Shown piece after piece: positions 1 through 21,456 of a DNA stretch of 21,496 bases. The notes beneath the pieces were generated by a model. That model made no database searches and was not told the origin of the DNA. It saw nothing but the letters and a program-made list of their open reading frames with translations. The position numbers and the translations under genes were made by a program. The first letter of the stretch is position 1. Each line of letters opens with the position of its first letter. This stretch comes from Octopus sinensis (Eukaryota): contig NW_021823701.1 of assembly GCF_006345805.1 (NCBI RefSeq), positions 1 through 21,496 of the forward strand. The letters run 5' to 3'.

Positions 1-1823
1 CGCTTGTCATCGAGAAACTGGTCGACAACACACAAACGTGCGCCGTGCCGGGCCGGAGCATCCATGACAACCTCCATCTGATGCGCTACATCATAGACAG
101 GGTAGTTAACGAACCTGGCATGGGTGGGGCCCTGATCAACTTGGATCAATCGAAAGCCTTTGATAGGGTAGACCATCGATACTTGGAGGCAGTCCTGAGA
201 GCGGCTGGTTTCGGTCCCGTCTTCCGCGGCTGGATAGCTGCCTTGTACAGAGGCATCCGTTCGGTAATTCGCGTAAATGGACATCTATCGAGACCTTTCG
301 ACATTGCACGTTCGGTCCGTCAGGGATGCCCCCTCTCGGCGCTTCTATACGTATTGACTCTTGAGCCACTACTGCGGAAGCTGGCGACTCTAAGGGGCAT
401 CCCGCGAGAATTGGGATGCGGGACGAGCGTGTCTGCATACGCGGACGACGTCACCGTCATAGTGTCAAGCCACGAGCACATCGAGCGGGTCGGCGAGACA
501 CTGAAAGACTACGAAGCGGTGACAGGAGCAAAAATCAACCGGGAAAAGTCAGTGGGCTTGCGGCTCGGAACCTGGAGAAGCAAGCCCATGCCGTCCACCA
601 GTACCTCCGTCGTGGGACGCTGGACAGACGGCCCGGTTGAGTTGCTCGGGGTCTGGTTCGGTCCGGACCTCCAAATGGCGAAGAACTGGAACGAGATAAC
701 GAGTAGGGTGGTCACTCTCGCCCAGCAATGGGCCGAGAGGAAACTGTCCCTAAAAGGTCGGGAGGAGGTGGTGAACGCGTACATCGCGTCCATCATCTAC
801 TACCGCCTCACAGTCGTACCTTGTCCCGACCCTACCATCACCAAACTAGAACGCATCCTCTTCCGCTTCTTGTGGAAAGGATGCGTCCCGATGGTCAGGC
901 GATCCATTTGCTGTCAACACCCGTTAAAAGGAGGGCTGGGCATGCCGTGGTTGATGATGCGCAGACACGCGCTGAGACTGTGACATCTCCGGCTCTATGT
1001 AGACGACGGTGAACAGGTGTGGTCGCCGTTTGTGAGGCACGCATTCCCGCAACTCGTCTCCATGACCGAACTACAGTCGTGGATCAAAATGAGGCCGAGG
1101 AAGGGCGAATGGCACCGCGAGTGTCGCGTTGCTCTCAAGCAACTCTGCCGTCCCGGGTCAACCTTGAGTGACTTCAACACAACCAAAGCATTCTATAGGG
1201 GATTAGTGGAGGGGAGGTACGACGACGAGCTCGGGGCAAACCTGGGCGTCGACGAGGAATACCTGACCCGCCTGTTTCAAACGACTTTCGGCCCGGGACC
1301 TATGGACAACTTCCAGAGATCCCTGGCCTGGCGGTGCTACCGAGAAGCGCTACCCGTTCGGGATAAGCTCTATAGGCATGGCTCGAGAAACACAGGGCCT
1401 ACCTGCCCGAGATGCGGGCAGAGCGACGAAACCGCTCTGCACGCAATCGTGCAGTGTCCAGCAATTTCCGACCTGTGGGCTTATGTCGAACGACTGCTGT
1501 CACGTGTGGGACGTGTCGGTTTATCAGCCGAGTCTATCGTTAATATCGTCACGCCTCCTTCTTTCAAACGGGAAGGAAGAGCTAATTTTATCATACTTGT
1601 GGCTATGGCGAAAGAATGTATCTGGTGGACGCGCCTGAAAGGATTGGAGACAAACACTTTCCTCTCTGGTCAATCTCTCATCAACTTCTTCAAGTATCAC
1701 TTGAAGAGGAAAGTGAGAGAAGAGAGGCAAGTTTTGTCTAGTGAATGTTTTAAAAAAAGATGGGTGAATGTAGGAAGGATGGCACGTATGAATGACGAAG
1801 CCACCTTGACTATGATTCTATGA
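1..1823 (+). pseudogene. Tx1 ORF2 (RT + zinc knuckle) with one in-frame stop at 981-983
   Basis: ORFs 45..983 and 1017..1823 share a frame. The TGA at 981-983 is CGA in copy 2 (gagactgcgacat). Confidence 0.9.
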
Positions 1824-2186
1824 ACCATAAAAATTAATACAGAGAGTTGCTTATTTGCAAAAAAAAAAAAAAAAGAAATATAACATGTGACTTCATTGAC
1901 CGAGGTTACCGTGGTCTTTTCCGTAGGCTTTTCTTTCCACTGGTAAACCTCACCTGTCCTCCCCTTTACACTTCATATTGACATTTCTGTGATAACGATC
2001 CCTATTATTCATTTTTTTCTCTCCCCCCTTTTTTTAACCCCTCCCCTTTTTTTTGTCCTTTTTCTTTCCTTTTACGATCCCTTTTGATCGAAAACCACCA
2101 CTCTCCTTTTTTTTACCCCCAAAAGAAAAGCTCTACCTTGTAATTTGTTCTATCTGTGTGCAGCCCTGTGTGGCTAATAAAGAAAC
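1..2186 (+). mobile_element. Tx1-group (L1 clade) non-LTR retrotransposon, copy 1; 5' part runs off the window
   Basis: RT motifs PGRSIHDNL, LDQSKAFDRVDH, VRQGCPLS, YADDVT; W..RKLSLKGR; C-terminal CPRC..ET..H...CP zinc knuckle. Pyrimidine-rich 3' UTR ending AATAAAGAAAC (2176-2186), homologous to 19224-21443. Confidence 0.93.
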
Positions 2187-2954
<768 letters not shown>

Positions 2955-2962
<8 letters not shown>

Positions 2963-3109
2963 GGGACTTATTCTTTGTGAGCCCAGTACTTATTCTATTG
3001 GTCTCTTTTGCCGAACCGCTAAGTGACAGGGACATAAACAACCAGCATCGGTTGTCAGGCAATGCTAGGGGGACAAACACAGACACACAAACACACACAC
3101 ACACATACA

Positions 3110-3112
<3 letters not shown>
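2955..3112 (-). mobile_element. SINE family A internal fragment, fused to the RTE 3' end
   Basis: Reverse complement matches 4265-4383 and the 94-bp array (cttagcggttcggcaaaagagacc..aataagtcccgggg). Confidence 0.85.

Positions 3113-3192
<80 letters not shown>
3113..3192. repeat. (TA)n followed by (GA)n microsatellite
   Basis: Direct reading. Confidence 0.95.
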
Positions 3193-3194
<2 letters not shown>

Positions 3195-3764
3195 AGTAAA
3201 TATATGGCCAACGAAGTACCGATATTTACTGGAAATAGCGAACGTAATAATACGACGCTATGTATAGCTTCACCGCGTATGTACTAGCAAAATGCGTGTG
3301 TGCAACAAACTAGAAAAAAATTGTCTTACCTCCAGGGAGAACATTTTTGCTATTACATACGCGGTGAAGCTATACATTAGCGTCGTATTATTACGTTCGC
3401 TATTCCAGTAAATATCGGTACTTCGTTGTGCCATATATTTACTTCTTTGTATATTTTTCCCTCACGGGCTATTCTTTACTGGAAAGCAATACTCTAGTAT
3501 TGCATTACTAATTTATTGAAACTTCTTCACCGTTCCCGTGCTGTTAGCGTTTCGGCGTTTCAGTCGAGTGTAATGGCATTAATGTGGTAACATCTGAAAG
3601 GTTGTCGTGGTATATGTTTGGCTGATGAAGATAGATCAAGTATATGTGGGCAGACATATCTTGAAAAATCTGAAACCTGCGCAGGTCCCACATTATCCTT
3701 TTCACCATCCTCGCAATTTTTTCTAGTTTGTTGCACACACGCATTTTTGCTAGTACATACGCGG
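3192..3764 (+). mobile_element. Hammerhead-bearing 400-bp repeat unit with a 5' inverted partial copy (Penelope-like pLTR or non-LTR retrozyme-like)
   Basis: 23-bp direct repeat at 3342-3364 and 3742-3764 (1 mismatch, period 400). 3192-3323 is the reverse complement of 3714-3764 joined to 3365-3446. Contains a hammerhead fold. Confidence 0.65.
3609..3697 (+). ncRNA. Type I hammerhead ribozyme; predicted cleavage after C3687 (GUC)
   Basis: CTGATGA 3622-3628; stem II AGAT/ATCT + TCAAG/CTTGA + ATATGT/ACATAT with loop GGGCAG; GAAA 3672-3675; stem III palindrome ACCTGCGCAGGT 3675-3686; GTC 3685-3687; stem I TGG/CCA + ATG/CAT plus further bulged pairs. Confidence 0.8.
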
Positions 3765-4181
3765 CAAAAGAGACCGATAGAATAAGTACTGGGCTTACAA
3801 AGAATAAGTCCCGGGGTCGATGCTGGTGTGTTTACGTCCCCGTCACCTAGCGGTTCGGCAAAAGAGACCGATAGAATAAGTACTGGACTTACAAAGAATA
3901 AGTCCCAGGGTCGATGCTGGTGTGTTTACGTCCCCGTCACCTAGCGGTTCGGCAAAAGAGACCGATAGAATAAGTACTGGGCTTACAAAGAATAAGTCCC
4001 AGGGGGGGATGTGGCTGGTGTGTTTACGTCCCCGTCACTTAGCGGTTCGGCAAAAGAGACCGATAGAATAAGTACTGGGCTAACAAAGAATAAGTCCCGG
4101 GGTCGATTTGCTCGACTAAAAAGGCGGTGCTCCAGCATGGCCGCAGTCAAATGACTGAAACAAGTAAAAGAGTAAAAGAGT
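3763..4181 (+). repeat. Four tandem copies of a SINE-A internal segment (periods 94, 94, 98); the last copy runs into the SINE 3' end
   Basis: ggcaaaagagacc starts at 3763, 3857, 3951, 4049. Ends ggcggtgctccagcatggccgcagtcaaatgactgaaacaagtaaaagagtaaaagag. Confidence 0.92.
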
Positions 4182-4196
4182 ATATATATATATATA

Positions 4197-4441
4197 AAGC
4201 CTTGTGAGTGGATTTGGTAGACGGAAACTGAAAGAAGCCTGTCGTATATATGTATATATATATATGTGTGTGTGTCTGTGTTTGTGTGTCTGTGTTTGTC
4301 CCCCCCTAGCGTTACTTAGCGGTTCGGCAAAGAGAGACCGATAGAATAAGTACTGGGCTTACAAAGAATAAGTCCCGGGGTCGATTTGCTCGGCTAAAGG
4401 CAGGCGGTGCTCCAGCATGGCCGCAGTGAAATGACTGAAAC
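4197..4441 (+). mobile_element. SINE family A, 5'-truncated with an internal deletion
   Basis: aagccttgtgagtggatttggtagacgg.., internal (TA)/(TG) tract, same core and 3' end as 4049-4181. Lacks the acaaccgatgctgg..cccc segment seen at 3030-3060. Confidence 0.85.
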
Positions 4442-5042: not shown

Positions 5043-5255
5043 GGAGGCGCAATGGCCCAGTGGTTAGGGCAGCGGACTCGTGGTCGGAGGATCGCGGTTT
5101 TGATTCCCAGACCGGGCGTTGTGTGTGTTTATTGAGCGAATACGCCTAAAAGCTCCACGAGGCTCCGGCAGGGGGTGGTGGCGACGCCTGTTGTACTCAT
5201 TTGCCACAACTTTCTCTCACTCTTACTTCCTGTTTTGTTTGTACCTGTTGTACCG
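5043..5255 (+). mobile_element. SINE family B, 3'-truncated
   Basis: ggaggcgcaatggcccagtggttagggcagcgg head; A box 5053-5063. Confidence 0.85.
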
Positions 5256-5258
5256 GGA

Positions 5259-6077
5259 GTTGTGAGTGTTTATTGAGCGAAAACACCTAAAAGCTCCACG
5301 AGGCTCCGGCAGGGGTCGGTGGCGACCCCTGTTGTACTCTCTCACCACAACTTTCTCTCACTCTTTCTTCCTGTTCTGTTGTACTGTATTTCAAAGGGCC
5401 GGCCTTGTCACTCTCTGTGTCACGCTGAATATCCCCGAGAACTCCGTTAAGGGTGCACGTGTCTGTGGAGTGCTCAGCCACTTACACGTTAATTTCACGT
5501 GCAGGCTGTTCCGTTGATTCGGATCAACCGGAACTCTCATCGTCGTAACCGACGGAGTGCTCCTGCAGGGGATTGGGGGACCCCTGTTGTACTCTTTCAC
5601 CACAACTTTCTCTCACTACTTATTGTTTCTGTTGTACCTGTATTTCAAAGGGCCGGCCTTGTCACTCTCTGTGTCACGCTGAATATCCCCGAGAACTCCG
5701 TTAAGGGTGCACGTGTCTGTGGAGTGCTCAGCCACTTACACGTTAATTTCACGTGCAGGCTGTTCCGTTGATTCGGATCAACCGGAACTCTCATCGTCGT
5801 AACCGACGGAGTGCTCCTGCAGGGGATTGTGGGGACCCCTGTTGTACTCTTAAAACCACAACTTTCTCTCACTTCTTACTTCCTGTTTCTGTTGTACCTG
5901 TATTTCAAAGGGCCGGCCTTGTCACTCTCTGTGTCACGCTGAATATCCCCGAGAACTACGTTAAGGGTGCACGTGTCTGTGGAGTGCTCAGCCACTTACA
6001 CGTTAATTTCACGAGCAGGCTGTTCCGTTGATTCGGATCAAACGGAACCCTCGTCGTCGTAACCGACGGAGTGCTTC
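5259..6077 (+). repeat. SINE-B body plus tail type 1, tandemly triplicated (255-bp period)
   Basis: acccctgttgtac at 5325, 5580, 5835. Each unit ends in two stem-loops (gttccgttgat/atcaaccggaac region) and cggagtgct. Confidence 0.92.
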
Positions 6078-6078
6078 A

Positions 6079-6271
6079 ATTGAGCGAAAATGCCTAAAAG
6101 CTCTACGAGACTCCGGCAGGGGTCGGTGGCGACCCCTGTTGTACTCATTTGCCACAACTTTTTCTCACTCTCTCTTTCTGTTTCTTGGGTAACGCTGAGG
6201 GGAGGGGGAACACATACGCCACAGAAACCGGGAAACCGGGCCCACGAGCCCGGCTAGGCTTGAAAAGGGCG
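6079..6271 (+). mobile_element. SINE family B, headless, tail type 2
   Basis: Body as above, then tttcttgggtaacgc..gaaaccggg..ggctaggcttgaaaagggcg. Confidence 0.8.
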
Positions 6272-6283
6272 AAATTATTTTGT

Positions 6284-6555
6284 GGAGGCGCAATGGCCCA
6301 GTGGTTAGGGCAGCGGACTCGAGGTCGGAGGATCGCGGTTTCGATTCCCAGACCGGTCGTTGTGTGTTTATTGAGCGAAAACACCTAAAAGCTCCACGAG
6401 GCTCCGGCAGGGGTCGCTGGCGACCCCTGTTGTACTCTTTCTTCTGTTGGCCTGCTCGCCTAGCCAGCGGGGTGGCGTCATTCGAAGGCTTAAACAATGC
6501 GAAGGGCATTGTGACCAGCGATGTGTAACAACATCTGATAGCCTGGTCGATCACG

Positions 6556-6560
<5 letters not shown>
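6284..6560 (+). mobile_element. SINE family B, full head, tail type 3
   Basis: Head and body, then unrelated tail ttggcctgctcgcctagccagcgg..tgtgaccagcgatgtg..cacggtgat, followed by (AT)n. Confidence 0.8.
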
Positions 6561-6596
<36 letters not shown>

Positions 6597-6597
6597 T

Positions 6598-6886
6598 GAG
6601 GCGCAATGGCCCAGTGGTTAGGGCAGCGGATTCGTGGTCGGAGGATCGCGGTTTCGATTCCCAGACCGGGCGTTGTGTGTGTTTATTGAGCGAAAACACC
6701 TAAAAGCTCCACGAGGCTCCGGCAGGGGTCGGTGGCGACCCCCTGTTCTACTTTTTCGTCCCAACTTTCTCTCATACTTCTTCCTGTTTCTTGGGTAACG
6801 CAGAGGGGGTGGGGAACACATACGCCACAGAAACCGGGAAACCGGGCCCATGAGGGTTAGGGTTAGGCTAGGCTTGAAAAGGGCGC
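6598..6886 (+). mobile_element. SINE family B, apparently full length, tail type 2
   Basis: Head, body and the same tail as 6079-6271. Confidence 0.85.
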
Positions 6887-7064: not shown

Positions 7065-7735
7065 ACCCAGCGTCCAATTACTCCCACCACAACACTAATC
7101 TCAAAAAGTCTTCTTGTGAACGTGACCTGGGTATTATTGTCGACAGAGATTCGTGTTGGACAAAACACATTGCTAAAATTGCCAAGAAGGCTGAGGGTGT
7201 CTTGGCATCACTCACCAAGTCCTTTGTGAGCCGCTCTCCGACTATCTATCTGCGGCTTTATATAGCTATGGTAAGATCTCACCTGCAATTTGCATCACCG
7301 GTCTGGAACCCCTTTCTTGCCCAGGATATCAATCGTCTGGAAGCCGTTCAGCGATGTGCAACCAAAAGAATACCCTCCATCAGGAATTGCCATATTCTGA
7401 ACGCCTTACTTCCCTGGGCATGGATACATTGAAACTCCGACGTCTGGCAGCTGACTTGGCAGACACCCATAAAATTATTAACCATCTTAGAAACAATAAC
7501 TCTGAGCACCTTTTCAAACTCCACCCATCTAACACCCGTGGTCATATTTAGAAAGTCAGAAAACAGCACAGCTCCCATGACTTCAGGAAACATTTTTTCA
7601 CGCTGAGAGTTGCTGAAGCATGGAACAAACTGCCGGCATCAGTTGTTAGTTATCGGAGCACTGCATCCTTCAAAACTTCCATGCTTCCTGAGATTAGCCA
7701 ACACTACACCTGATTTTGTCCCTTCCATACACACG
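7065..7735 (+). mobile_element. CR1-group LINE, 5'-truncated 3' fragment (family 1)
   Basis: ERDLGIIVD, LYIAMVRSHLQFASPVWNP, LEAVQR.ATK, LPYSERL..L, RRL.ADL, TRGH, FF.LRV.EAWNKLP, SFK. Frameshift near 7390, stop at 7549-7551. Confidence 0.9.
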
Positions 7736-8455
7736 CTGAAGCATGGAACAAACTGCCGGCATCAGTTGTTAGTTGTCGGAGCACTGCATCCTTCAAAACT
7801 TCCATGCTTCCTGAGATTAGCCAACACTACACCTGATTTTCTCCGCTACATACACACGCTGAAGCATGGAACAAACTGCCGGCATCAGTTGTTAGTTGTC
7901 GGAGCACTGCATCCTTCAAAACTTCCATGCTTCCTGAGATTCGCCAACACTACACTTGATTTTCTCCCATCCATACACACGCTGAAGCATGGAACAAACT
8001 GCCGGCATCAGTTGTTAGTTGTCGGAGCACTGCATCCTTCAAAACTTCCATGCTTCCTGAGATTCACCAACACTACACTTCATTTTCTCCCATCCATACA
8101 CACAACAAGCATGGTACAAACTGCCGGCATCAGTGTTAGTTGTCGGAGCACTGCATCCTTCAAAACGTCCATGCTTCCTGAGATTCGCCAACTACACCTG
8201 ATCTTCCCCTCCATACACACACTGAGGCATGGAACAAACTGCCGGTATCAGTTGTTAGTTGTCGGAGCACTGCATCCTTCAAAACGTCCATGCTTCCTGA
8301 GATTCGCCAACACTACACCTGATCTTCTCCCCTCCATACACACACAAGCATGGAACAAACTGCCGGCATCAGTTTTTAGTTGTCGGAGCACTGCATCCTT
8401 CAAAACTTCCATGCTTCCTGAGATTCACCAACACTACACCTGATTTTCTCCATAC
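7613..8455 (+). repeat. Seven tandem copies of the CR1 3'-terminal ~123 bp
   Basis: gcatgg(a/t)acaaactg at 7618, 7741, 7864, 7987, 8109, 8227, 8348. Confidence 0.93.
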
Positions 8456-9087: not shown

Positions 9088-9631
9088 ATTACGGAGATGT
9101 ACTTGCATAGCAAGTGACCTGGTCTGAGATCGTGTGCTGGAACGAAAATAATTGCAGCGTGGAAGGTGTTTATAAGCGATTTAAGAAACTCACATCTGTC
9201 CCTTAGCCTTATACTCTATCTCTCTCACTACTTTTCTTCTCTCCGCCCCTCATCCCCTCTTACTGCCAATACCCTCTCTATCTGCTATAAGATTCCTTAC
9301 TCTATCTCTATCGCCTGCTACCTATCACCCTCTCATGACAGCTCTACCATACTCTGCCTGTCCTTCTCTTCAAGGGGTGTTTAGAACGACCTCTAATTCA
9401 CCCGAAAGGGGTCGCAGAACCGATCAATCCACCTGAATCTGACAGGACAATGTAGGTCGCCGTTTGAAAGCGACGAAAAGATTTGAACAAATTCAATTGA
9501 AATGTTGAAGTGAATCTAACGGTTTTTGTGTGTTTCTTAAATCGCTTATAAACACCTTCCACGCTGCAATTGTTTTCGTTCCAGCACACGATCTCAGATC
9601 AAGTCACTTGCTATGCAAGTACATCTCCGTA

Positions 9632-9662
<31 letters not shown>

Positions 9663-9861
9663 CATATGAAGCTTTGTCAGTGAACAGGTCACGGTCGGAA
9701 AGTGAGGAAAAGATTTGAACAAATTCAATTGAAATGTTGAAGTGAATCTAACGGTTTTTGTGTGTTTCTTAAATCGCTTATAAACACCTTCCACGCTGCA
9801 ATTGTTTTCGTTCCAGCACACGATCTCAGATCAAGTCACTTGCTATGCAAGTACGTCTCCG

Positions 9862-9903
<42 letters not shown>

Positions 9904-10099
9904 GAAGCTTTGTCAGTGAACAGGTCACGGTCGGAAAGTGAGGAAAAGATTTGAACAAATTCAATTGAAATGTTGAAGTGAATCTAACGGTTTTTGTGTG
10001 TTTCTTAAATCGCTTATAAACACCTTCCACGCTGCAATTATTTTCGTTCCAGCACACGATCTCAGATCAAGTCACTTGCTATGCAAGTACATCTCCGTA

Positions 10100-10145
<46 letters not shown>

Positions 10146-10262
10146 GAAGCTTTGTCAGTGAACAGGTCACGGTCGGAAAGTGACGAAAAGATTTCAACAA
10201 ATTAAAATGAAATGTTGAAGTGAATCTAACGTTTTTTTGTGGTTTTTTTAAATCGCTTATAA
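9088..10262 (+). mobile_element. Inverted 107-bp arm + pyrimidine-rich body + about 3.4 tandem units of 232-242 bp; Penelope-like pLTR array or TIR element
   Basis: 9088-9194 is the reverse complement of 9527-9633 (4 mismatches by eye). Periods 232, 236, 242 differ only in (TA)n length. No coding remnant recognised. Confidence 0.55.
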
Positions 10263-10344
10263 AATATAGTACATATGTTGTGTAATGTATGTAGTACATA
10301 GTTTATGATGTATTTAGTATTTCCAAACAAGAATATTATTGACA

Positions 10345-10384: not shown

Positions 10385-10547
10385 TTGTATGTCTGTTTAT
10401 CCCCGACACCGCTTGACAACCGGTGCTGGTGTGTTCATGTCCCCGTAACTTAGCGTTTCGTCAAAAGAGAAAATAGATTAAATACTAGGCCTACAAAAAA
10501 TAAGTATTGGGTTCGAATTTCGCGAATAAAGGCGCTGCTGCGGCATG

Positions 10548-10548
<1 letters not shown>
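10385..10548 (+). mobile_element. SINE family A 3' half, heavily altered
   Basis: Similar to 4049-4140 (gcttgacaaccggtgctggtgtg..cttagcg..ggcatgg). Confidence 0.75.
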
Positions 10549-10606
<58 letters not shown>

Positions 10607-10624
10607 GTGTGTGGTGTGTGTGGT

Positions 10625-10815
10625 GTTTGTAATGTCTGTTTATTTCTCGAACATCGTTGGACAACGGGGGTGGGTGTGTACAATTCCCCGAACTTAGCGG
10701 TTCGGGAAAAGGGACCGATAGTTTAAATACTAGGCCTACAAAAAATAAGTCCTGGGGTCGATTTGCACGAATAAAGGCATTGCTCCACCATGGCCCCAGT
10801 CAAATAATTGAAAAA
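10625..10815 (+). mobile_element. SINE family A 3' half, heavily altered
   Basis: cttagcggttcggg..gtcctggggtcgatttg..catggccccagtcaaat. Confidence 0.75.
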
Positions 10816-11355: not shown

Positions 11356-14335
11356 AAATGGAAGATAAAATTCCTGGAGGACTGGATCGATGCCCATCCA
11401 AACCACATCCCTTTCTTCGTCCTCACTGAAACCCATCTTAGTGACCTCCACTTGGAAGCCGAGGTGAAAGTTAAAAATTTCAAAGCCATTCGTGCTGATC
11501 GTGCTGGCAGAAGAAAGGGTGGGACTGCCATTTATGTTCATGATTCATTCTCAACAGAAGCTATGAACATATTTTCCAATGGATACTGCGAAGCAGTCGC
11601 TATATTCAGTCAAACCAACAACTTCACAGTAGTTGGGCTCTACAGACCACCCCAAACGCCCCTACCATGCTTCAAGGAATGCCTCAACAACATAAAGTGT
11701 TTCATTCAGCAGTGTCAACCTGACAACATTTTAATGACGGGAGACTTCAACCTTCCCGGGGTTGACTGGTCTACAAACAGTCTGCCGCCAGGTTCTTCTC
11801 TCTCAACCCCTGACAGGGAGGCAGTGGAATCGCTTCTTGACTTCATGGATGATTTCTTCCTGTCCCAACTGGTGCTCGAACCAACGAGATGTCACAAAAA
11901 CGTCTTAGACTTAATTTTCAGCAATCACACTGATACTATCCACAATATTGCAGTGGAGAAAACCCTACTCTCCGACCATGACATGGTTCTCTGTGATCTG
12001 AGATTTCACCGGCCAAAATGCAAAACAAATGTCATCCCTCCTGTTCATCCATTTGACACTATGGATTTCCACAATGCAAACTGGGAAGCGATCAATAATG
12101 ATCTTGCACAAGTCGATTGGTCCTTCACGCACACATACACACCCACTAACATCAAAAAGTCCTGGCAGTCATTTGTAGACACCATTACGAACATATGTGC
12201 AAACCACACCCCATTAAGATCTGCAAACAAATCTAAGTGTCGAATCCCTAGAAATAGAAAATCTCTCATCAGGAAAATTAAAAGAATTAACAAAAAAAAT
12301 CAACGAGCTGAAATACTGTCAACAGCAACACACCAACCTGACTGCCATCTCGTCGCTAGAGATTAAAAAACATAAACTCCAAAACAACATGATGTCTATC
12401 ATCAATAGTCAGAGAAGAGCTGAAGAGGCCTGGGCCATTGAGAAGATCAAACTCAATCCCAAAGTATTCTTTTCATTTGCAAAAATACACAGAGTCACTG
12501 GTTCTACTGTTGGCCCTCTGATTGATGAAAATGGTACTCTTCAAGACAATGCCAAAACCATGGGAGAGATATTGCAGAAACAATACTGCTCTGTTTTCAG
12601 CAATCCTGATATGACTGATCTGGTCTGTATCAGTGATGTTACTCCCCAATACACTTTATCGGACATAACCTTTGGTGCTACTGATGTCTTAGCAGCAATA
12701 AAGGAAATGAAGCATAAATCAGCAGTAGGTCCCGATAGGTTCCCTGCTTGTGTCTTGAAGATGTGTCAACACCAACTTGCACCCACTCGAGCCAATCTGT
12801 GGCGGAACTCACTGGATGCTGGATATATACCAGAAGACCTATCCCAGTTTGTATTCCCAGTTTTCAAAAAAGGAAACAAATCGCTTGCCGTGAATTACCG
12901 TCCAATCTCACTCACCTCTCATATCATTATGGTATTTGAGAGAGTGCTGAGATCGCGTATGACTCACTTCCTTGAGAGTCATGATATGCTGAACTCCAAC
13001 CAGCATGGATTCCGTAATGGAAGGGATTGCCTGACGCAGCTACTGCATCATTTTGATGACGTTTTGAGAGCCTTGGGAGAGGGTTCCAACACTGATGTCA
13101 TCTACCTTGATTTCAGCAAGGCCTTTGACAGGTTTGATCATAAGATCCTTTTGAGAAAGATGTCTAATATTGGTGTCACTAGAAAGCTGCTACAGTGGAT
13201 CAAGTGCTTCCTGTCTAACAGAACCCAACATGTTGTAGTCGAAGGAGTCAAATCCAGCCCAGCCAAAGTCAGCAGTGGTGTCCCACAAGGCACGGTGTTG
13301 GGCCCACTTCTCTTCATCATCTACATAAATGATATTACTGACACCATCAAACACAGTAACATCAGAACCTTCGCTGATGATTCCAAGCTCCAGAAGGTCA
13401 TCAATGGCGTGGATGACCGAATAAGCCTTCAGTCAGACCTACTGGCTGTTGTCCAATGGGCGGAAAAGAACAACATATTGCTAAACATAGACAAATTCGA
13501 ACTGATCCACTTTGGAAGGGAGGACGCTCTGAAACTCCCATACTCCCTTCCTTCTGGAGAAATTATCATGGCGTCAACAACATCAGAGATTTGGGAGTAA
13601 CAGTGGACAGCAACATAAGCTGGGCTACACATATAAGCAGCAAATTTGACATGGCCCGCAGAATGTGTTCCTGGATTCTCAGAACCTTCCAGTCGAGAGA
13701 TTCCCACACCATTATCCTTCTCTTCTTCACTTTTGCCCGACCCCCACCTTGAATACTGTTGTCCACTGTGGTCTCCCTACACGAAACATGAGAATTGAAG
13801 CTCCCCAAAGGTCAATCACAAAAAGATAGATGGCATGTCAGACCTTGACTACTGGGGTAGACTAGAGAAGCTGAAACTGTATTCACTCCAACAACACTGT
13901 GAACGCTACATTATCTGTATGATGTGGAAAATATTCCATCAGCACTGTCCGAATGATGTTGGCATCACCTTCAAAATACATCCAAGGCTTGGACAACGTG
14001 CCATCCGTCCACAACACAAATCTAAATCGCATCACATAACAACAATACGGCACAATTATTTCACCTCAATTGGACCCGCTCTCTTCAACATTACACCAGG
14101 ACACGTCAAAAAAGAAACTGACCACACAAAATTCAAGAAGTCTTTGGACAAATTCCTTCAAACAGTCCCGGACAAACCATCCACACCCGGATATGTCTCC
14201 GGAAACAATAACTGTCTGCTCGAATGGGCCTTGGTGCCCAAATCCTGAATTGAAAGACTTCGCCAGGTGGTGCTATTAAGTTAGACATGGCCTGGGCCAA
14301 TACTGGCCAAAACCTTTCTAAGTTATTCTAAGTTA
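11352..14335 (+). mobile_element. CR1-group LINE (family 3): near-complete APE+RT ORF2, truncated in the endonuclease N-terminus, at least 4 frameshifts
   Basis: APE motifs LTETHL, RADR..GG.AIYV, YRPP, GDFNLP.VDW, EPTR..NVLDLIFSN, SDH. RT motifs NYRPISLTS, YLDFSKAFD, SGVPQGTVLGPLLF, FADDSK, RDLGV. Stop at 14248; tail (TTCTAAGTTA)2 at 14316-14335; (TA)n on both sides. Confidence 0.93.
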
Positions 14336-14339
14336 TATA

Positions 14340-14402
<63 letters not shown>

Positions 14403-14509
14403 GTATGTATATATGTATGTATATATGTATGTATATATGTATGTATGTATATATCTATATATATCTATATATATATGCATGCATATAACTATGTATATAT
14501 GTATGTATA

Positions 14510-14554
<45 letters not shown>

Positions 14555-14643
14555 GTATGTATATATGCATGTATATATGTATTTATGTATATATGTATGT
14601 ATGTATGTATATATATATATCTATATATATATACATGCATATA

Positions 14644-14679
<36 letters not shown>

Positions 14680-14812
14680 CATACATGTATTATATTATGT
14701 ATATATGTATATATTATGTATATATATATGTATGTATGCATATATATATATATATATACATGTATATATATATTTGTATGTATGAGTATAAGCGTATGTA
14801 TGAGTATGTATG
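14336..14812. repeat. (TA)n/(TATG)n compound microsatellite
   Basis: Direct reading. Confidence 0.95.
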
Positions 14813-17904: not shown

Positions 17905-17965
17905 TTATTATTATATTATTATTATTATTATTATTATTTATTATTATTATTATATATTATTATCA

Positions 17966-18007
<42 letters not shown>

Positions 18008-18206
18008 TATTATTATTATTATCATTATTATTATCATTATTATTATTATTATATTATTATATTATTATTATCATTATTATTATTATATTATTATTATTAT
18101 CATTATTATTCATTTATTATTATTATTTATTATTATTATTATTATTATCATTATTATTATCATTATTATTATTATCATTATTATTATTATTATTATCATC
18201 ATATCA

Positions 18207-18244
<38 letters not shown>

Positions 18245-18266
18245 GTTATTATTATTATTATTATTA

Positions 18267-18326
<60 letters not shown>

Positions 18327-18400
18327 TATTATTATTATCATCATTGTTATTATTATCATTGTTATTATTAGTATTGTTATTATTATTATTATTATTATTA

Positions 18401-18447
<47 letters not shown>

Positions 18448-18606
18448 GTTATTATTATTATTATATTATATTATTATTATTATCATAATTATTATTACTA
18501 TTATTATTATTATTATTATCATTATTATTATTATTATTATTATTATCATTATTATCATTACTATTATTATTATTATTATTATTATTATCATTATTATCAT
18601 TATTAA

Positions 18607-18638
<32 letters not shown>

Positions 18639-18797
18639 TATGTTTGACTTTTGCTTTATATTTGTACAAGTTGGCTCCAAGTCTCACCCAGAGACCTCAA
18701 GAGACAACAGGGTTGGAAGTCCATGTTGTTGTTATGCCTAGTGTGCCATATATTCAGGGGGTGGGGATGTTGTACTAATGAATGTCTAAAAAAAAGG

Positions 18798-18837
<40 letters not shown>

Positions 18838-18940
18838 TATTATTATTATTATTATTATTATCATCATCATCATCATTTGATATTATTATTATTATTATTA
18901 TATTATTATTATTATTATTATATTATTATTATTATTATTC

Positions 18941-18971
<31 letters not shown>

Positions 18972-19003
18972 TATTATTATTATTATTATTACTATTATTA
19001 TTA

Positions 19004-19043
<40 letters not shown>
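17905..19043. repeat. Long (ATT)n/(ATC) microsatellite with a ~160-bp non-repeat island at 18638-18800
   Basis: Direct reading. Confidence 0.95.
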
Positions 19044-21443
19044 GGCAGCAGCGTGTACTGGACCTGGCAGCTAAACGGGAGCATCCCGGTTTTGTGAGCC
19101 GAGGAGCAGTAACACTGCTGAAGAAAGATCTAAACAAGGGAAATGTAATAGATAACTTTAGGCCCATCACTCTGCTTAATGCAGACTTGAAGATTTTGGC
19201 CAAGGTGTTAGCCAAGAGGTTGGCGCTTGTCATCGAAAAACTGGTTGACAAGGCGCAAACGTGCACCGTGCCGGGACCGGATCATCCATGACAACCTCCA
19301 CCTGATGCGCTACATCATAGACAGGGTAGTTAACGAACCTGGCATGGGTGGGGCGCTGATCAATCGAAAGCTTTCGATAGGGTAGACCATCGATACTTGG
19401 AGGCAGTCCTCAGAGCGGCTGGCTTCGGTCCCGTCTTCCGCGGCTGGATAGCCACTTTGTACAGAGGCATCCGTTCGGTAGTTCGCGTAAATGGACATCT
19501 ATCGAGACCTTTCGACATCGCACGTTCGGTTCGTCAGGGATGCCCCCTCTCGTCGCTTCTATACGTATTGACTCTCGAGCCACTATTGCGGAAACTGGTA
19601 ACTCTGAGGGGCATCCCGTGAGAACTGGGATGCGGGACGAGCGTGTCTGCATACGCGGACGACGTCACCGTCATTGTGTCTAGCCACGAGCACATCGAGC
19701 GGGTCGGCGAGACACTGAAAAACTACGAAGCAGTGACAGGAGCAAAAATCAACCGGGAAAAGTCAGTGGGCTTGCGACTAGGCACCTGGAGAAGCAAACC
19801 CATGCCGTCCACCAGCGCCTCCGTTGTGGGACGCTGGACCGACGGTCCGGTCGAGTTGCTCAGGGTCTGGTTCAGTCCGGACCTCCAAATGGAGAAGAAC
19901 TGGAACGAGATAACGAGTAGGGTGGTCACTTTCGCCCAGCAATGGGCCGAGAGGAAACTGTCCCTAAAAGGTCGGGCGGAGGTGGCAAACACGTACATCG
20001 CGTCCATCATCTACTACCGCCTGACCGTCGTGCCTTGTTCCGACCCTACCATCACCAAACTAGAACGTATTCTCTTTCGCTTCTTATGGAAAGGATGCGT
20101 CCCGATGGTCAGACGATTCATTTGCTGCCAACTCCCGTTAAAAGGAGGGCTGGGCATGCCGTGGTTGATGATGCGCAGACACGCGCTGAGACTGCGACAT
20201 CTCAGGCTCTTCGTAGACGACGGTGAACAGGTGTGGTCACCGTTTGTGAGGCACGCGTTCCCGCAGCTCGTCTCCATGACCGAAATGCAATCGTAGATCA
20301 AAAAGAGGCCGAGGAAGGGCGAATGGCACCGCGAGTGTCGCGTTGCTCTCAAGCAACTCTGCCGTCCTGGGTCAACCTTGAGTGACTCCATCACAACCAA
20401 AGCATTCTATAGGGGATTAGTGGAGGGGAGGTACGACAATGCGCTCGGGGCGAACCTGGACGTCGACGAGGAATACCTGACCCGCCTGTTCGGGACGACT
20501 TTCGGGCCAGGGCCCATGGACAACTTCCAGAGATCCCTGGCCTGGCAGTGCTACCGAGAAGCGCTACCCGTTCGGGATAAGCTCTACAGACACGGCTCGA
20601 GAAACACGGGGCCGACCTGCCCGAGATGCGGGCAGGGCGACGAAACCGTTCTGCACGCACTCGTGCAGTGTCCAACAATTTCCGACCTGTGGGCTTATGT
20701 CGAACAACTGCTGTTACGTGTGGGACGAGTTGGTTTATCAGCTGAGTCTATTGTCAATATTGTCACGCCTCCTTCCTTCAAACGGGAAGGAAGAGCTATT
20801 TTCATCATCCTTGTGACTATGGCGAAAGAATGTATCTGGTGGACGCGTCTGAAAGGATTGGAGAGAAACACTTTCCTCTTTGGTCAATCTCTCATCAACT
20901 TCTTCAAGTACCACTTGAAAAGGAAAGTGAGAGTAGAGAGGCAAGTTTTGTCTAGCGAACGTTTTAAAAAAAGATGGGTGAATGTAGCAAGAATGGCACG
21001 TATGAATGACGAAGCCACCTTGAGCATAATCCTATGAACCCAGAAATTGAAAACAGAGGGTTACCCACTTGCAAACAAATGTGGTAACATATAACAATAT
21101 TGACCGAGGTTACCGTGGTCTTTTTCCTAGGCTTTTCTTCCCACGGATAAACCTTACTTGCTTTCCCCTTTACACCATACATCATGACACTGTGATACAC
21201 GATCCCTATTGATCGCTTTTTTTTCCTCTGCCCCTTTTTTCCTCTTTTTTCTTCTTTTTTCATTTTTCTTTTCTTTTTTTCCTTTCTTTCTTTTTTTTCT
21301 TTTCCTTTTATTTGTTCTTTTTTCCCTTTTACGATCCCTTTTGATCGAAAACCTACGCCACTTTTTTTTTCTCCCCCAAAAGAAAAGCTCTACCTTGTAA
21401 CTTGTCCCATCTGTGTGCAGCCCTGTGTGGCCAATAAAGAAAC
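19044..21443 (+). mobile_element. Tx1-group LINE, copy 2; 5'-truncated at the RT start, flanked on both sides by (ATT)n
   Basis: NFRPITLLNADLKILAK motif; colinear with 1-2186 from 19224. Lesions: 1-bp insertion near 19275, 10-bp deletion near 19363, stops at 19619-19621 and 20294-20296. Ends AATAAAGAAAC. Confidence 0.93.
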
Positions 21444-21456
21444 TTATTATTATTAC

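What the first reader, a model, noticed from the sequence alone, without database searches (positions are those of the whole stretch)
3609..3697. Complete type I hammerhead ribozyme with extended stem II and palindromic stem III
Seen: all core elements in the correct order and spacing: bulged stem I 5' strand, CUGAUGA (3622-3628), a 15-bp three-segment stem II, GAAA (3672-3675), stem III formed by the perfect 12-nt palindrome ACCUGCGCAGGU, the GUC cleavage triplet, and a stem I 3' strand pairing back to 3609-3621. The 10.1-11.1 pair is A-U instead of the usual G-C. Known: type I hammerheads occur in Penelope-like elements and metazoan non-LTR retrozymes, and palindromic stem III permits cleavage as dimers; those are usually minimal with short stem II. 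Inference: a probably active self-cleaving RNA with an unusually long stem II. Whether it is already catalogued cannot be determined here.
Basis: partly seen in the sequence, partly recalled or inferred. Interest (0 to 1): 0.85.

Follow-up and report, generated by a model that had tools for sequence, protein, structure and literature searches.

The report
Lone hammerhead-like ribozyme motif, unconfirmed
A 90-base stretch in a repeat-rich animal genome has every sequence feature of a type I hammerhead self-cleaving RNA and is much better than chance would give in this window, but no curated model recognises it and no second copy could be found, so it is a plausible but unproven member of a well-known ribozyme class.

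Summary
Window 3609-3698 (+) carries CUGAUGA, a 15-bp three-segment helix II, GAAA, a perfect 12-nt palindrome as helix III, a GUC site and a bulged helix I. A canonical-core descriptor finds only this site in the window. Chance simulations give about 1e-4 motifs of this quality per window, roughly 13 per 2-Gb genome. None of 719 scrambled-core controls run on the real sequence comes close.

Against it:
- No Rfam hammerhead model scores it, even at E<=10 on 106 nt.
- The 10.1-11.1 pair is A-U instead of the conserved G-C.
- The hammerhead fold is 3.8 kcal/mol above the MFE.
- It is single-copy in the window.
- Every route to other copies found nothing related (metagenome, viral and prokaryote scans, two ORF tricks).

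The context is suggestive only. The motif lies in a 39% GC, about 400-nt unit whose first 48 nt recur after it. An inverted partial copy and microsatellites lie upstream. This resembles Penelope-like or retrozyme insertions, but the window has no Penelope-like element (PLE) ORF and no tandem array.

Verdict: probably a genuine hammerhead-lineage motif (about 0.55), most likely cleaving as a dimer. Chance look-alike about 0.3. If real it is a new member of a known kind. Modest interest.

The parts
3609..3621 (+). Helix I, 5' strand (GGUAUAUGUUUGG). G3620 and G3621 pair next to the core, U3618-U3619 are bulged, 3614-3617 pair, then an internal loop and a G3609-G3610 closing stem.
   Evidence: Sequence; constrained folds.
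3622..3628 (+). Core C3-U4-G5-A6-U7-G8-A9 (CUGAUGA).
   Evidence: It is one of 15 CUGANGA sites in the window and the only one with helices.
3629..3671 (+). Helix II: 4 bp (A10.1-U11.1 first), a 3x3 internal loop, 5 bp, bulged U3641, 6 bp, loop GGGCAG.
   Evidence: Present in the unconstrained MFE as well.
3672..3675 (+). Core G12-A13-A14 plus A15.1 (GAAA).
3675..3686 (+). Helix III: perfect 12-nt palindrome ACCUGCGCAGGU. It forms a weak 4-bp hairpin with a GCGC loop, or a 12-bp helix between two copies.
   Evidence: (I4).
3687..3687 (+). C17 of the GUC triplet. The predicted scissile bond lies between 3687 and 3688.
   Evidence: position inferred from hammerhead numbering.
3688..3698 (+). Helix I, 3' strand (CCACAUUAUCC).
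3342..3741 (+). Putative repeat unit of about 400 nt, 39% GC: partial 'a' 3342-3364, 'b' 3365-3446, 'c' 3447-3716 carrying the motif, then the start of the next 'a'.
   Evidence: 400-nt register of direct repeat D3. Unit MFE z is about -5, but 8% of 400-nt windows here reach that value.
3717..3764 (+). Segment 'a' (48 nt), the second direct copy. It abuts the 94-nt satellite.
   Evidence: 98% identical to the reverse complement of 3273-3319; 96% identical to 3342-3364 over 23 nt.
3196..3446 (.). Foldback. The left arm 3196-3319 is the reverse complement of a+b. The right arm 3320-3446 is a truncated a plus b.
   Evidence: 83% identity over 265-269 nt; folding z = -19.6.

Best explanation
The stretch 3609-3698 (+) is a genuine hammerhead-lineage motif of type I topology. 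It sits in a low-GC, roughly 400-nt non-coding repeat of the kind mobilised by Penelope-like elements (PLEs), that is, a retrozyme-like or pseudo-LTR-like unit.

Proposed mechanism, all inferred. When the + strand is transcribed, helices I, II and III form around the 15-nt core. The 2'-OH of C3687 attacks the adjacent phosphate. This leaves a 2',3'-cyclic phosphate on C3687 and a 5'-OH on C3688. Helix III is only a marginal 4-bp hairpin but a perfect palindrome. Efficient cleavage would therefore need two copies pairing through a 12-bp intermolecular helix III (a double hammerhead), as described for newt, axolotl and PLE-type motifs. In the full-length unit the most stable fold pairs UGAUG of the core with CAUUA of helix I. 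The ribozyme would then be active only transiently or as a dimer.

At this locus there is only one ribozyme, so it cannot release a unit-length RNA. This copy may be a solo or decayed member of its family.

Shown: the motif itself, its improbability by chance in this window, the dimer energetics and the repeat architecture. Inferred: transcription, cleavage, family membership and the retroelement link.
For: - The core is fully canonical, with U7 and a GUC site. It is the only descriptor hit in the window.
- Chance rate for this quality is about 1.5e-4 per window. It falls to 1.7e-5 if closeness to the MFE is also required.
- The best of 719 scrambled-core controls on the real sequence reached -12.3 kcal/mol against -17.8 here.
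- Three features that the descriptor did not ask for match published metazoan type I motifs. Helix III plus its loop is a perfect palindrome (about 1/16 given a 4-bp hairpin with a tetraloop). Helix II runs 4 bp before its first loop. Helix I runs 6 bp before its internal loop. PMC4209133 gives helix I 6 bp, helix II 4 bp and a small palindromic helix III, and mentions shrimps, flies and rotifers.
- A dimer is strongly favoured.
- The context fits. The unit is 39% GC and about 400 nt with a 48-nt terminal direct repeat. An inverted partial copy lies upstream and microsatellites adjoin it. Non-LTR retrozymes are described as 170-400 nt and low GC (PMC7229834). PLE insertions are described as partial tandems with an inverted truncated copy and a microsatellite bias (PMC8557442).
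- The host is a repeat-rich metazoan with LINEs.
Against: - No Rfam hammerhead family matches, even at E<=10 on 106 nt.
- A10.1-U11.1 replaces the highly conserved G-C. The extra nucleotide typical of PLE minimal hammerheads (HHRs) between positions 9 and 10.1 is absent.
- The local MFE is not unusual (z = -0.52). The hammerhead fold is 3.8 kcal/mol above the MFE and holds about 0.1% of the ensemble.
- A UU bulge lies 2 bp from the core in helix I.
- The motif is single-copy in the window by BLAST and by a covariance model built from it. The next best match scores 14 bits and lacks the core.
- The window has no tandem array and no PLE RT or GIY-YIG ORF.
- No related sequence was found in any accessible collection, so covariation is untested.
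- The unit's folding z of about -5 is matched by 8% of 400-nt windows here.
Confidence: 0.55

Rival explanations
1. Chance look-alike. A hairpin and a short palindrome are both common in this palindrome-rich repeat DNA. Here they happen to lie between a CUGAUGA and a GAAA, with weak flanking complementarity. Nothing is cleaved.
For: - The simulated rate implies about 13 equally good chance motifs per 2-Gb genome, and about 1650 looser ones.
- The two metagenome loci matching core plus helix III show that such strings arise by chance.
- No Rfam hit.
- The 10.1-11.1 pair is non-consensus.
- Helix I needs bulges and the local fold is not significant.
- Ten non-simple perfect 12-nt palindromes occur in the window.
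- 23% of 400-nt windows fold with z <= -3.
- The motif is single-copy.
- The number of windows the first stage read is unknown.
Against: - For one window the expectation is about 1e-4 or less.
- No scrambled-core control on the real sequence approaches it.
- Several features that were not selected for agree with published metazoan type I motifs: the palindromic loop 3, the 4-bp and 6-bp helix lengths before the loops, U7 and GUC.
Confidence: 0.3
2. Relic. The sequence descends from a real hammerhead-bearing repeat, but this copy is catalytically dead or nearly so. The causes would be the 10.1-11.1 change, the helix I bulge, an expanded helix II and the loss of its tandem partner. This is a sub-case of the best explanation and its probability is contained within that 0.55, not added to it.
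For: - It is a solo copy among rearranged repeats. The first 'a' segment is truncated and the unit abuts a truncated satellite copy.
- The pair is A-U where G-C is highly conserved.
- The HHR-compatible fold is a small fraction of the ensemble.
- PLE-type motifs show low activity in vitro even when intact (PMC4209133).
Against: - All 11 strictly conserved core letters and the A15.1-U16.1 pair are intact. Neutral decay would be expected to hit them.
- 10.1-11.1 is changed on both sides, so the pair is kept.
Confidence: 0.2
3. Box C/D snoRNA-like element or k-turn. UGAUGA (3623-3628) would be read as box C and CUGA (3670-3673) as box D.
For: The only Rfam matches to the stretch are C/D snoRNA families, at 9-11 bits: sR41, ceN28 and snR67.
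Against: - Those scores are far below the gathering thresholds of 54-70 bits, with E-values of 3-9.
- No terminal stem flanks the boxes.
- The segment between the boxes is a closed hairpin and not a free guide.
- The resemblance is the known overlap between the hammerhead core and C/D box letters.
Confidence: 0.02

Closest known systems
Canonical metazoan type I hammerheads of non-LTR retrozymes and satellite DNAs (newt, axolotl, Schistosoma, coral, mussel; PMC7229834, PMC4209133)
   Same: - Type I topology and a full consensus core.
- Helix II runs 4 bp to its first loop and helix I 6 bp to an internal loop.
- Helix III is weak and palindromic, which implies action as a dimer.
- The carrier is low GC and about 400 nt, in a metazoan genome.
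   Different: - Helix II continues past an internal loop for 11 more bp instead of ending in loop 2.
- The 10.1-11.1 pair is A-U.
- Helix III is 4 bp instead of 1-2 bp.
- Helix I has a UU bulge.
- There is no tandem array here, only a 48-nt terminal redundancy.
- Rfam models do not match.
Hammerheads in the pseudo-LTRs of Penelope-like elements (PLEs), including the fly, rotifer and shrimp variants with a small palindromic helix III (PMC4209133)
   Same: - Helix II is larger than usual.
- Helix III is palindromic.
- Helix I is poorly defined.
- The insertion architecture has a direct terminal repeat, an inverted truncated copy and adjoining microsatellites (PMC8557442).
   Different: - The unpaired nucleotide between A9 and 10.1 is missing.
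- G10.1-C11.1 is not kept.
- No PLE reverse transcriptase or GIY-YIG ORF lies within the window. The RT genes present are LINE-type (APE, RVT_1, zf-RVT).
Double-hammerhead mode of cleavage, first described for viroid and newt transcripts (reviewed in PMC6155905)
   Same: A palindromic helix III lets two copies form one long helix III and two active sites. The predicted gain here is about 15 kcal/mol.
   Different: Only one copy is present at this locus, so dimerisation would have to occur between transcripts of different loci.

Membership tests
Hammerhead ribozyme, type I | Conserved core: C3 U4 G5 A6 N7 G8 A9, G12 A13 A14, the A15.1-U16.1 pair, and H17 (not G). | tested here: met
   CUGAUGA 3622-3628, GAA 3672-3674, A3675-U3686, C3687.
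Hammerhead ribozyme, type I | Three helices around the core, with helix I open-ended. | tested here: met
   At least 4, 4 and 3 contiguous bp starting from the core. The constrained fold is -17.8 kcal/mol. Helix I is bulged and helix III is marginal as a hairpin (-1.8).
Hammerhead ribozyme, type I | G10.1-C11.1 pair closing helix II, described as highly conserved in PMC4209133. | tested here: not met
   A3629-U3671. The pair is kept but with different bases.
Hammerhead ribozyme, type I | Match to the curated Rfam hammerhead covariance models (all hammerhead families in Rfam 15). | tested here: not met
   No hammerhead family was reported at gathering score. None was reported at E<=10 on 301 nt or 106 nt or at E<=1 on the whole window. 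The 43-nt helix II may depress the score, and this could not be tested.
Hammerhead ribozyme, type I | Tertiary contact between loops of helices I and II. | tested here: inconclusive
   Internal loops lie at the canonical distances, 4 bp up helix II and 6 bp up helix I. The conserved loop nucleotides could not be compared.
Hammerhead ribozyme, type I | Core conservation and compensatory changes across homologues. | tested here: inconclusive
   No homologue could be retrieved. The window has one copy only. Metagenome, viral and prokaryote scans gave only unrelated strings. Two ORF-based look-ups found nothing.
Hammerhead ribozyme, type I | Site-specific self-cleavage. | not testable with these tools
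   Needs transcription and cleavage assays.
Metazoan non-LTR retrozyme | Tandem repeats of about 170-400 nt, each carrying a type I hammerhead. | tested here: not met
   There is one ribozyme and about 1.1 units. Only the 48-nt segment 'a' recurs at the 400-nt register. It could be a solo or decayed copy.
Metazoan non-LTR retrozyme | Low GC content (<45-50%) and no coding capacity. | tested here: met
   39% GC. Only short ORFs without homologues.
Metazoan non-LTR retrozyme | Expression as linear and circular RNAs of unit length. | not testable with these tools
   No transcriptome is available.
Hammerhead of a Penelope-like element (PLE) pseudo-LTR | Lies in the terminal repeat of an element that encodes a PLE reverse transcriptase, with or without GIY-YIG. 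| tested here: not met
   The RT ORFs of the window are LINE-type (RVT_1 with zf-RVT or Exo_endo_phos). ORFs near the motif have no Pfam match. A non-autonomous derivative is not excluded.
Hammerhead of a Penelope-like element (PLE) pseudo-LTR | Minimal-HHR signature: a long helix II, palindromic 15.2-16.2 and loop 3, and an extra nucleotide between 9 and 10.1. | tested here: inconclusive
   The long helix II and the palindrome are met. The extra nucleotide is not met.
Box C/D snoRNA | Boxes C and D brought together by a terminal stem, a free guide segment, and a score at or above the family's Rfam gathering threshold. | tested here: not met
   Scores are 9-11 bits against thresholds of 54-70. 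There is no terminal stem, and the interior is a closed hairpin.

The most novel reading that the evidence does not exclude
The motif is the first-seen copy of an uncatalogued family of roughly 400-nt retrozyme-like elements in a marine invertebrate genome. The genome looks crustacean-like from its microsatellite load. The family's type I hammerhead would replace loop 2 by an internal loop plus an 11-bp extension and would use A10.1-U11.1. This variant escapes all Rfam hammerhead models yet would still cleave as a dimer.
Probability: 0.25. Interest if true: 0.45.

Novelty: new member of a known kind. Interest (0 to 1): 0.3.

Why it matters
Type I hammerheads are already known in huge numbers in animal genomes, inside Penelope-like elements and retrozymes. 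Another one would be ordinary biology.

Two modest points would matter if it is real and active. First, an extended, internally looped helix II and an A-U 10.1-11.1 pair would widen the range of hammerheads that homology models should accept, since every Rfam model missed this one. Second, it would mark a retrozyme-like or PLE-dependent repeat family in this genome.

If it is a chance motif, it gives a calibrated measure of how good a hammerhead look-alike can be: about ten per 2-Gb genome at this quality.

Tried and rejected
- **Rfam 15.** I ran it at gathering score, and at E<=10 or E<=1 on 301 nt, 106 nt and the whole window. No hammerhead family appeared. The only hits were weak C/D snoRNA look-alikes and microsatellite-driven miRNA artefacts.
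- **Other copies by DNA pattern.** The metagenome scan gave 2 loci that are the same unrelated GC-rich sequence with no helix II. Viral contigs gave 0. Prokaryote genomes gave 2 chance strings. A satellite-repeat probe in viral contigs gave 0.
- **Other copies through spurious ORFs.** A 66-aa ORF across the motif and a six-frame concatenate of 3196-3770 both found nothing in the 5.8-billion-protein collection.
- **Organism identity through a LINE reverse transcriptase.** The best match was only 56% identical (Argonauta hians; also Mnemiopsis and many marine metagenome contigs). The source genome is therefore not in the collection.
- **Second copy inside the window.** Neither BLAST nor a covariance model built from the candidate found one.
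- **A Penelope-like element (PLE) ORF near the motif.** Pfam found none.
- **Rod-like folding of the 400-nt unit.** z is about -5. I rejected this as evidence because 8% of all 400-nt windows here do as well, and 'c' alone gives z = -0.27.
- **Reading A3629 as the PLE-type extra nucleotide.** I rejected this because U3671 would then be unpaired between 11.1 and G12.
- **Supplementary figures of PMC4209133.** These show the shrimp hammerheads but are not held in the library.

Full report
**What is in the sequence.**
- Helix I 5' strand: 3609-3621.
- Core CUGAUGA: 3622-3628.
- Helix II: 3629-3671. It has three paired segments of 4, 5 and 6 bp. A 3x3 internal loop and a bulged U3641 separate them, and the loop GGGCAG caps them.
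- GAAA: 3672-3675.
- Helix III: the perfect palindrome ACCUGCGCAGGU at 3675-3686.
- Cleavage site: GUC, with C17 at 3687.
- Helix I 3' strand: 3688-3698.

Constrained folding gives this hammerhead structure -17.8 kcal/mol. Two qualifications apply. A 12-nt palindrome cannot fold into 6 bp on its own, so as a hairpin helix III is 4 bp plus a GCGC loop and is worth only -1.8 kcal/mol. The pair next to the core in helix II is A-U.

**Is it more than chance?** I ran a descriptor that requires CUGANGA, GAAA, A15.1-U16.1, H17 and at least three contiguous pairs per helix. It finds this site and nothing else on either strand. None of the other 14 CUGANGA sites has a paired helix II leading to a GAAA.

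Plain Markov simulations over 80 Mb gave 38 loose hits, none with energy as low as -17.8. An importance-sampled simulation equivalent to 7.7e9 positions gave these expected counts:

| Quality of hit | Expected per window | Expected per 2-Gb genome |
|---|---|---|
| Any hit | 0.018 | about 1650 |
| At least 4,4,3 bp and energy <= -17.8 | 1.5e-4 | about 13 |
| Also within 3.8 kcal/mol of the MFE | 1.7e-5 | about 1.5 |

Real repeat-rich DNA has more hairpins than a Markov chain. I therefore also ran 719 scrambled-core versions of the descriptor on the real window. They gave 11 hits, which matches the simulated rate. The best reached -12.3 kcal/mol and none reached -17.8. The motif is thus very unlikely by chance in one window. 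A whole large genome would still be expected to contain a few equivalents, and I do not know how many windows the first stage read.

**Evidence against a working hammerhead.**
- No Rfam 15 hammerhead family matches. This holds at gathering score, at E<=10 on 301 nt or 106 nt and at E<=1 on the whole window. The only matches to the stretch are 9-11-bit hits to C/D snoRNA families. These reflect the shared letters UGAUGA and CUGA.
- The local fold is not unusually stable (z = -0.52).
- The hammerhead fold lies 3.8 kcal/mol above the MFE and accounts for about 0.1% of the predicted ensemble.
- In the 400-nt context the MFE pairs UGAUG of the core with CAUUA of helix I.
- G10.1-C11.1 is described as highly conserved in canonical hammerheads and in those of Penelope-like elements (PLEs) (PMC4209133). 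Here the pair is A-U.
- A UU bulge sits two pairs from the core in helix I.

**Features I did not select for that fit the published class.** PMC4209133 describes canonical metazoan type I motifs as having helix I of 6 bp, helix II of 4 bp and a short helix III with a small palindromic loop. This makes them work as dimers. The paper also notes that PLE-type motifs have a helix II larger than usual, and that shrimp, fly, rotifer and mosquito variants share a small palindromic helix III.

Here helix II runs exactly 4 bp to its first loop. Helix I runs 6 bp, with the bulge, to an internal loop. Helix III plus its loop is a perfect palindrome. Two copies are predicted to co-fold through a 12-bp helix III at -57.9 kcal/mol, against 2 x -21.6 for separate monomers. 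The core also uses the commonest options, U7 and GUC.

**Surroundings.** The window is metazoan and extremely repeat-rich.
- It has long microsatellites and several tandem arrays and no tRNAs.
- It has LINE fragments with APE, RVT_1 and zf-RVT domains. Their best database relative is only 56% identical (Argonauta hians, then marine metagenome contigs and Mnemiopsis).
- Two copies of one LINE family, 88% identical over 2.2 kb, lie at the two ends of the window. Each ends in a microsatellite, so the motif is not part of that LINE.

The motif lies in a 569-nt block, 3196-3764, at 39% GC. I name its parts a, b and c.
- 'a' is 48 nt at 3717-3764.
- 'b' is 3365-3446.
- 'c' is 3447-3716 and carries the motif.
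- Read left to right, the block is: the reverse complement of a+b (3196-3319), a truncated a (3342-3364), b, c, then a again.
- The two direct copies of 'a' are in a 400-nt register.

To the left are (AT)n and (AG)n runs and an inverted copy of a dispersed 94-nt satellite family. To the right the block abuts a truncated array of the same satellite.

A unit of about 400 nt with low GC, a terminal direct repeat, an inverted truncated copy upstream and microsatellites alongside matches two published descriptions. One is non-LTR retrozymes (PMC7229834). The other is PLE-type insertions (PMC8557442). A 2026 preprint argues that animal retrozymes are non-autonomous PLE derivatives.

This resemblance is not proof. 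The locus has one ribozyme and no array. No PLE ORF is in the window. The unit's strong folding (z about -5) is matched by 8% of 400-nt windows here.

**The missing test.** The decisive evidence would be conservation and covariation in other copies. I could not obtain any.
- The window has a single copy, both by BLAST and by a covariance model built from the candidate. The next best match scores 14 bits and has no core.
- Pattern scans of metagenome, viral and prokaryote collections returned only unrelated strings.
- Two attempts to reach the repeat through spurious ORFs in the protein collection returned nothing.
- The source genome is evidently not in any collection I could search.

**Verdict.** I put about 0.55 on a genuine hammerhead-lineage motif carried by a retrozyme-like or PLE-dependent repeat, cleaving mainly as a dimer if at all. 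Within that 0.55, a decayed and inactive solo copy is a serious possibility. I put about 0.3 on a chance look-alike and the remainder on other readings.

If real, it is a new member of a well-known kind, with a somewhat unusual helix II and 10.1-11.1 pair. Interest is modest.

Noticed in passing
window 3196-3446: Near-perfect foldback: two arms of about 125 nt at 83% identity with almost no spacer. It gives the strongest folding signal of the window (z = -19.6). It lies directly upstream of the motif-bearing segment and shares the 48-nt 'a' segment with it.
   Followed up: partly
window 3762-4107; also 2955-3161 (-), 4310-4441, 10421-10813: A dispersed repeat family built around a 94-nt unit (CGGCAAAAGAGACCGATAGAATAAGTACTGGG...). 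It is tandem (3.6 copies) right after the motif block and inverted before it. In other copies it is joined to (AT)n and (GT)n tracts and to a conserved tail (GATTTGCTCGACTAAA...GGCCGCAGTCAAATGACTGAAAC). No core motif and no Rfam hit.
   Followed up: partly
window 1-2190 and 19224-21447: Two copies of one LINE family (RVT_1 plus zf-RVT ORFs), 88% identical over 2.2 kb, both on the + strand. Each ends in a different microsatellite, (TATC)158 and (TTA)n. This suggests microsatellite-tailed 3' ends.
   Followed up: partly
window 11452-13600: A third LINE fragment with APE endonuclease (Exo_endo_phos_2) and RVT_1 ORFs. Its closest database relative is only 56% identical (Argonauta hians), so the source genome is absent from the protein collection.
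   Followed up: partly
window 2188-2818, 14334-14773, 17905-19043: Very long microsatellites: (TATC)x158, (TATA)x111 and (TTA)x379. The last drives GC down to 10%. The TA-rich tracts produce many sub-threshold Rfam miRNA hits (mir-297, mir-1277, mir-3149), which are artefacts.
   Followed up: yes
window 5111-6854, 7612-8451, 9466-10263: Three further tandem arrays with periods of 141/254/313 nt, 123 nt (6.9 copies) and 236 nt (3.4 copies). The 123-nt array reads as a 277-aa ORF with spurious Pfam hits. None contains a hammerhead core.
   Followed up: partly
window 3566-3586: A degenerate inverted copy of segment 'a' inside segment 'c'. It pairs with 3342-3364 in the predicted fold and accounts for much of the 400-nt unit's folding stability.
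   Followed up: no
L001 3265-3320 (-) and L002 6949-7004 (-): Two metagenome contigs share an identical GC-rich stretch containing CTGATGA...GAAACCTGCGCAGGTC by chance. It has no helix II. It serves as a concrete example of a core-plus-palindrome string without a hammerhead.
   Followed up: yes
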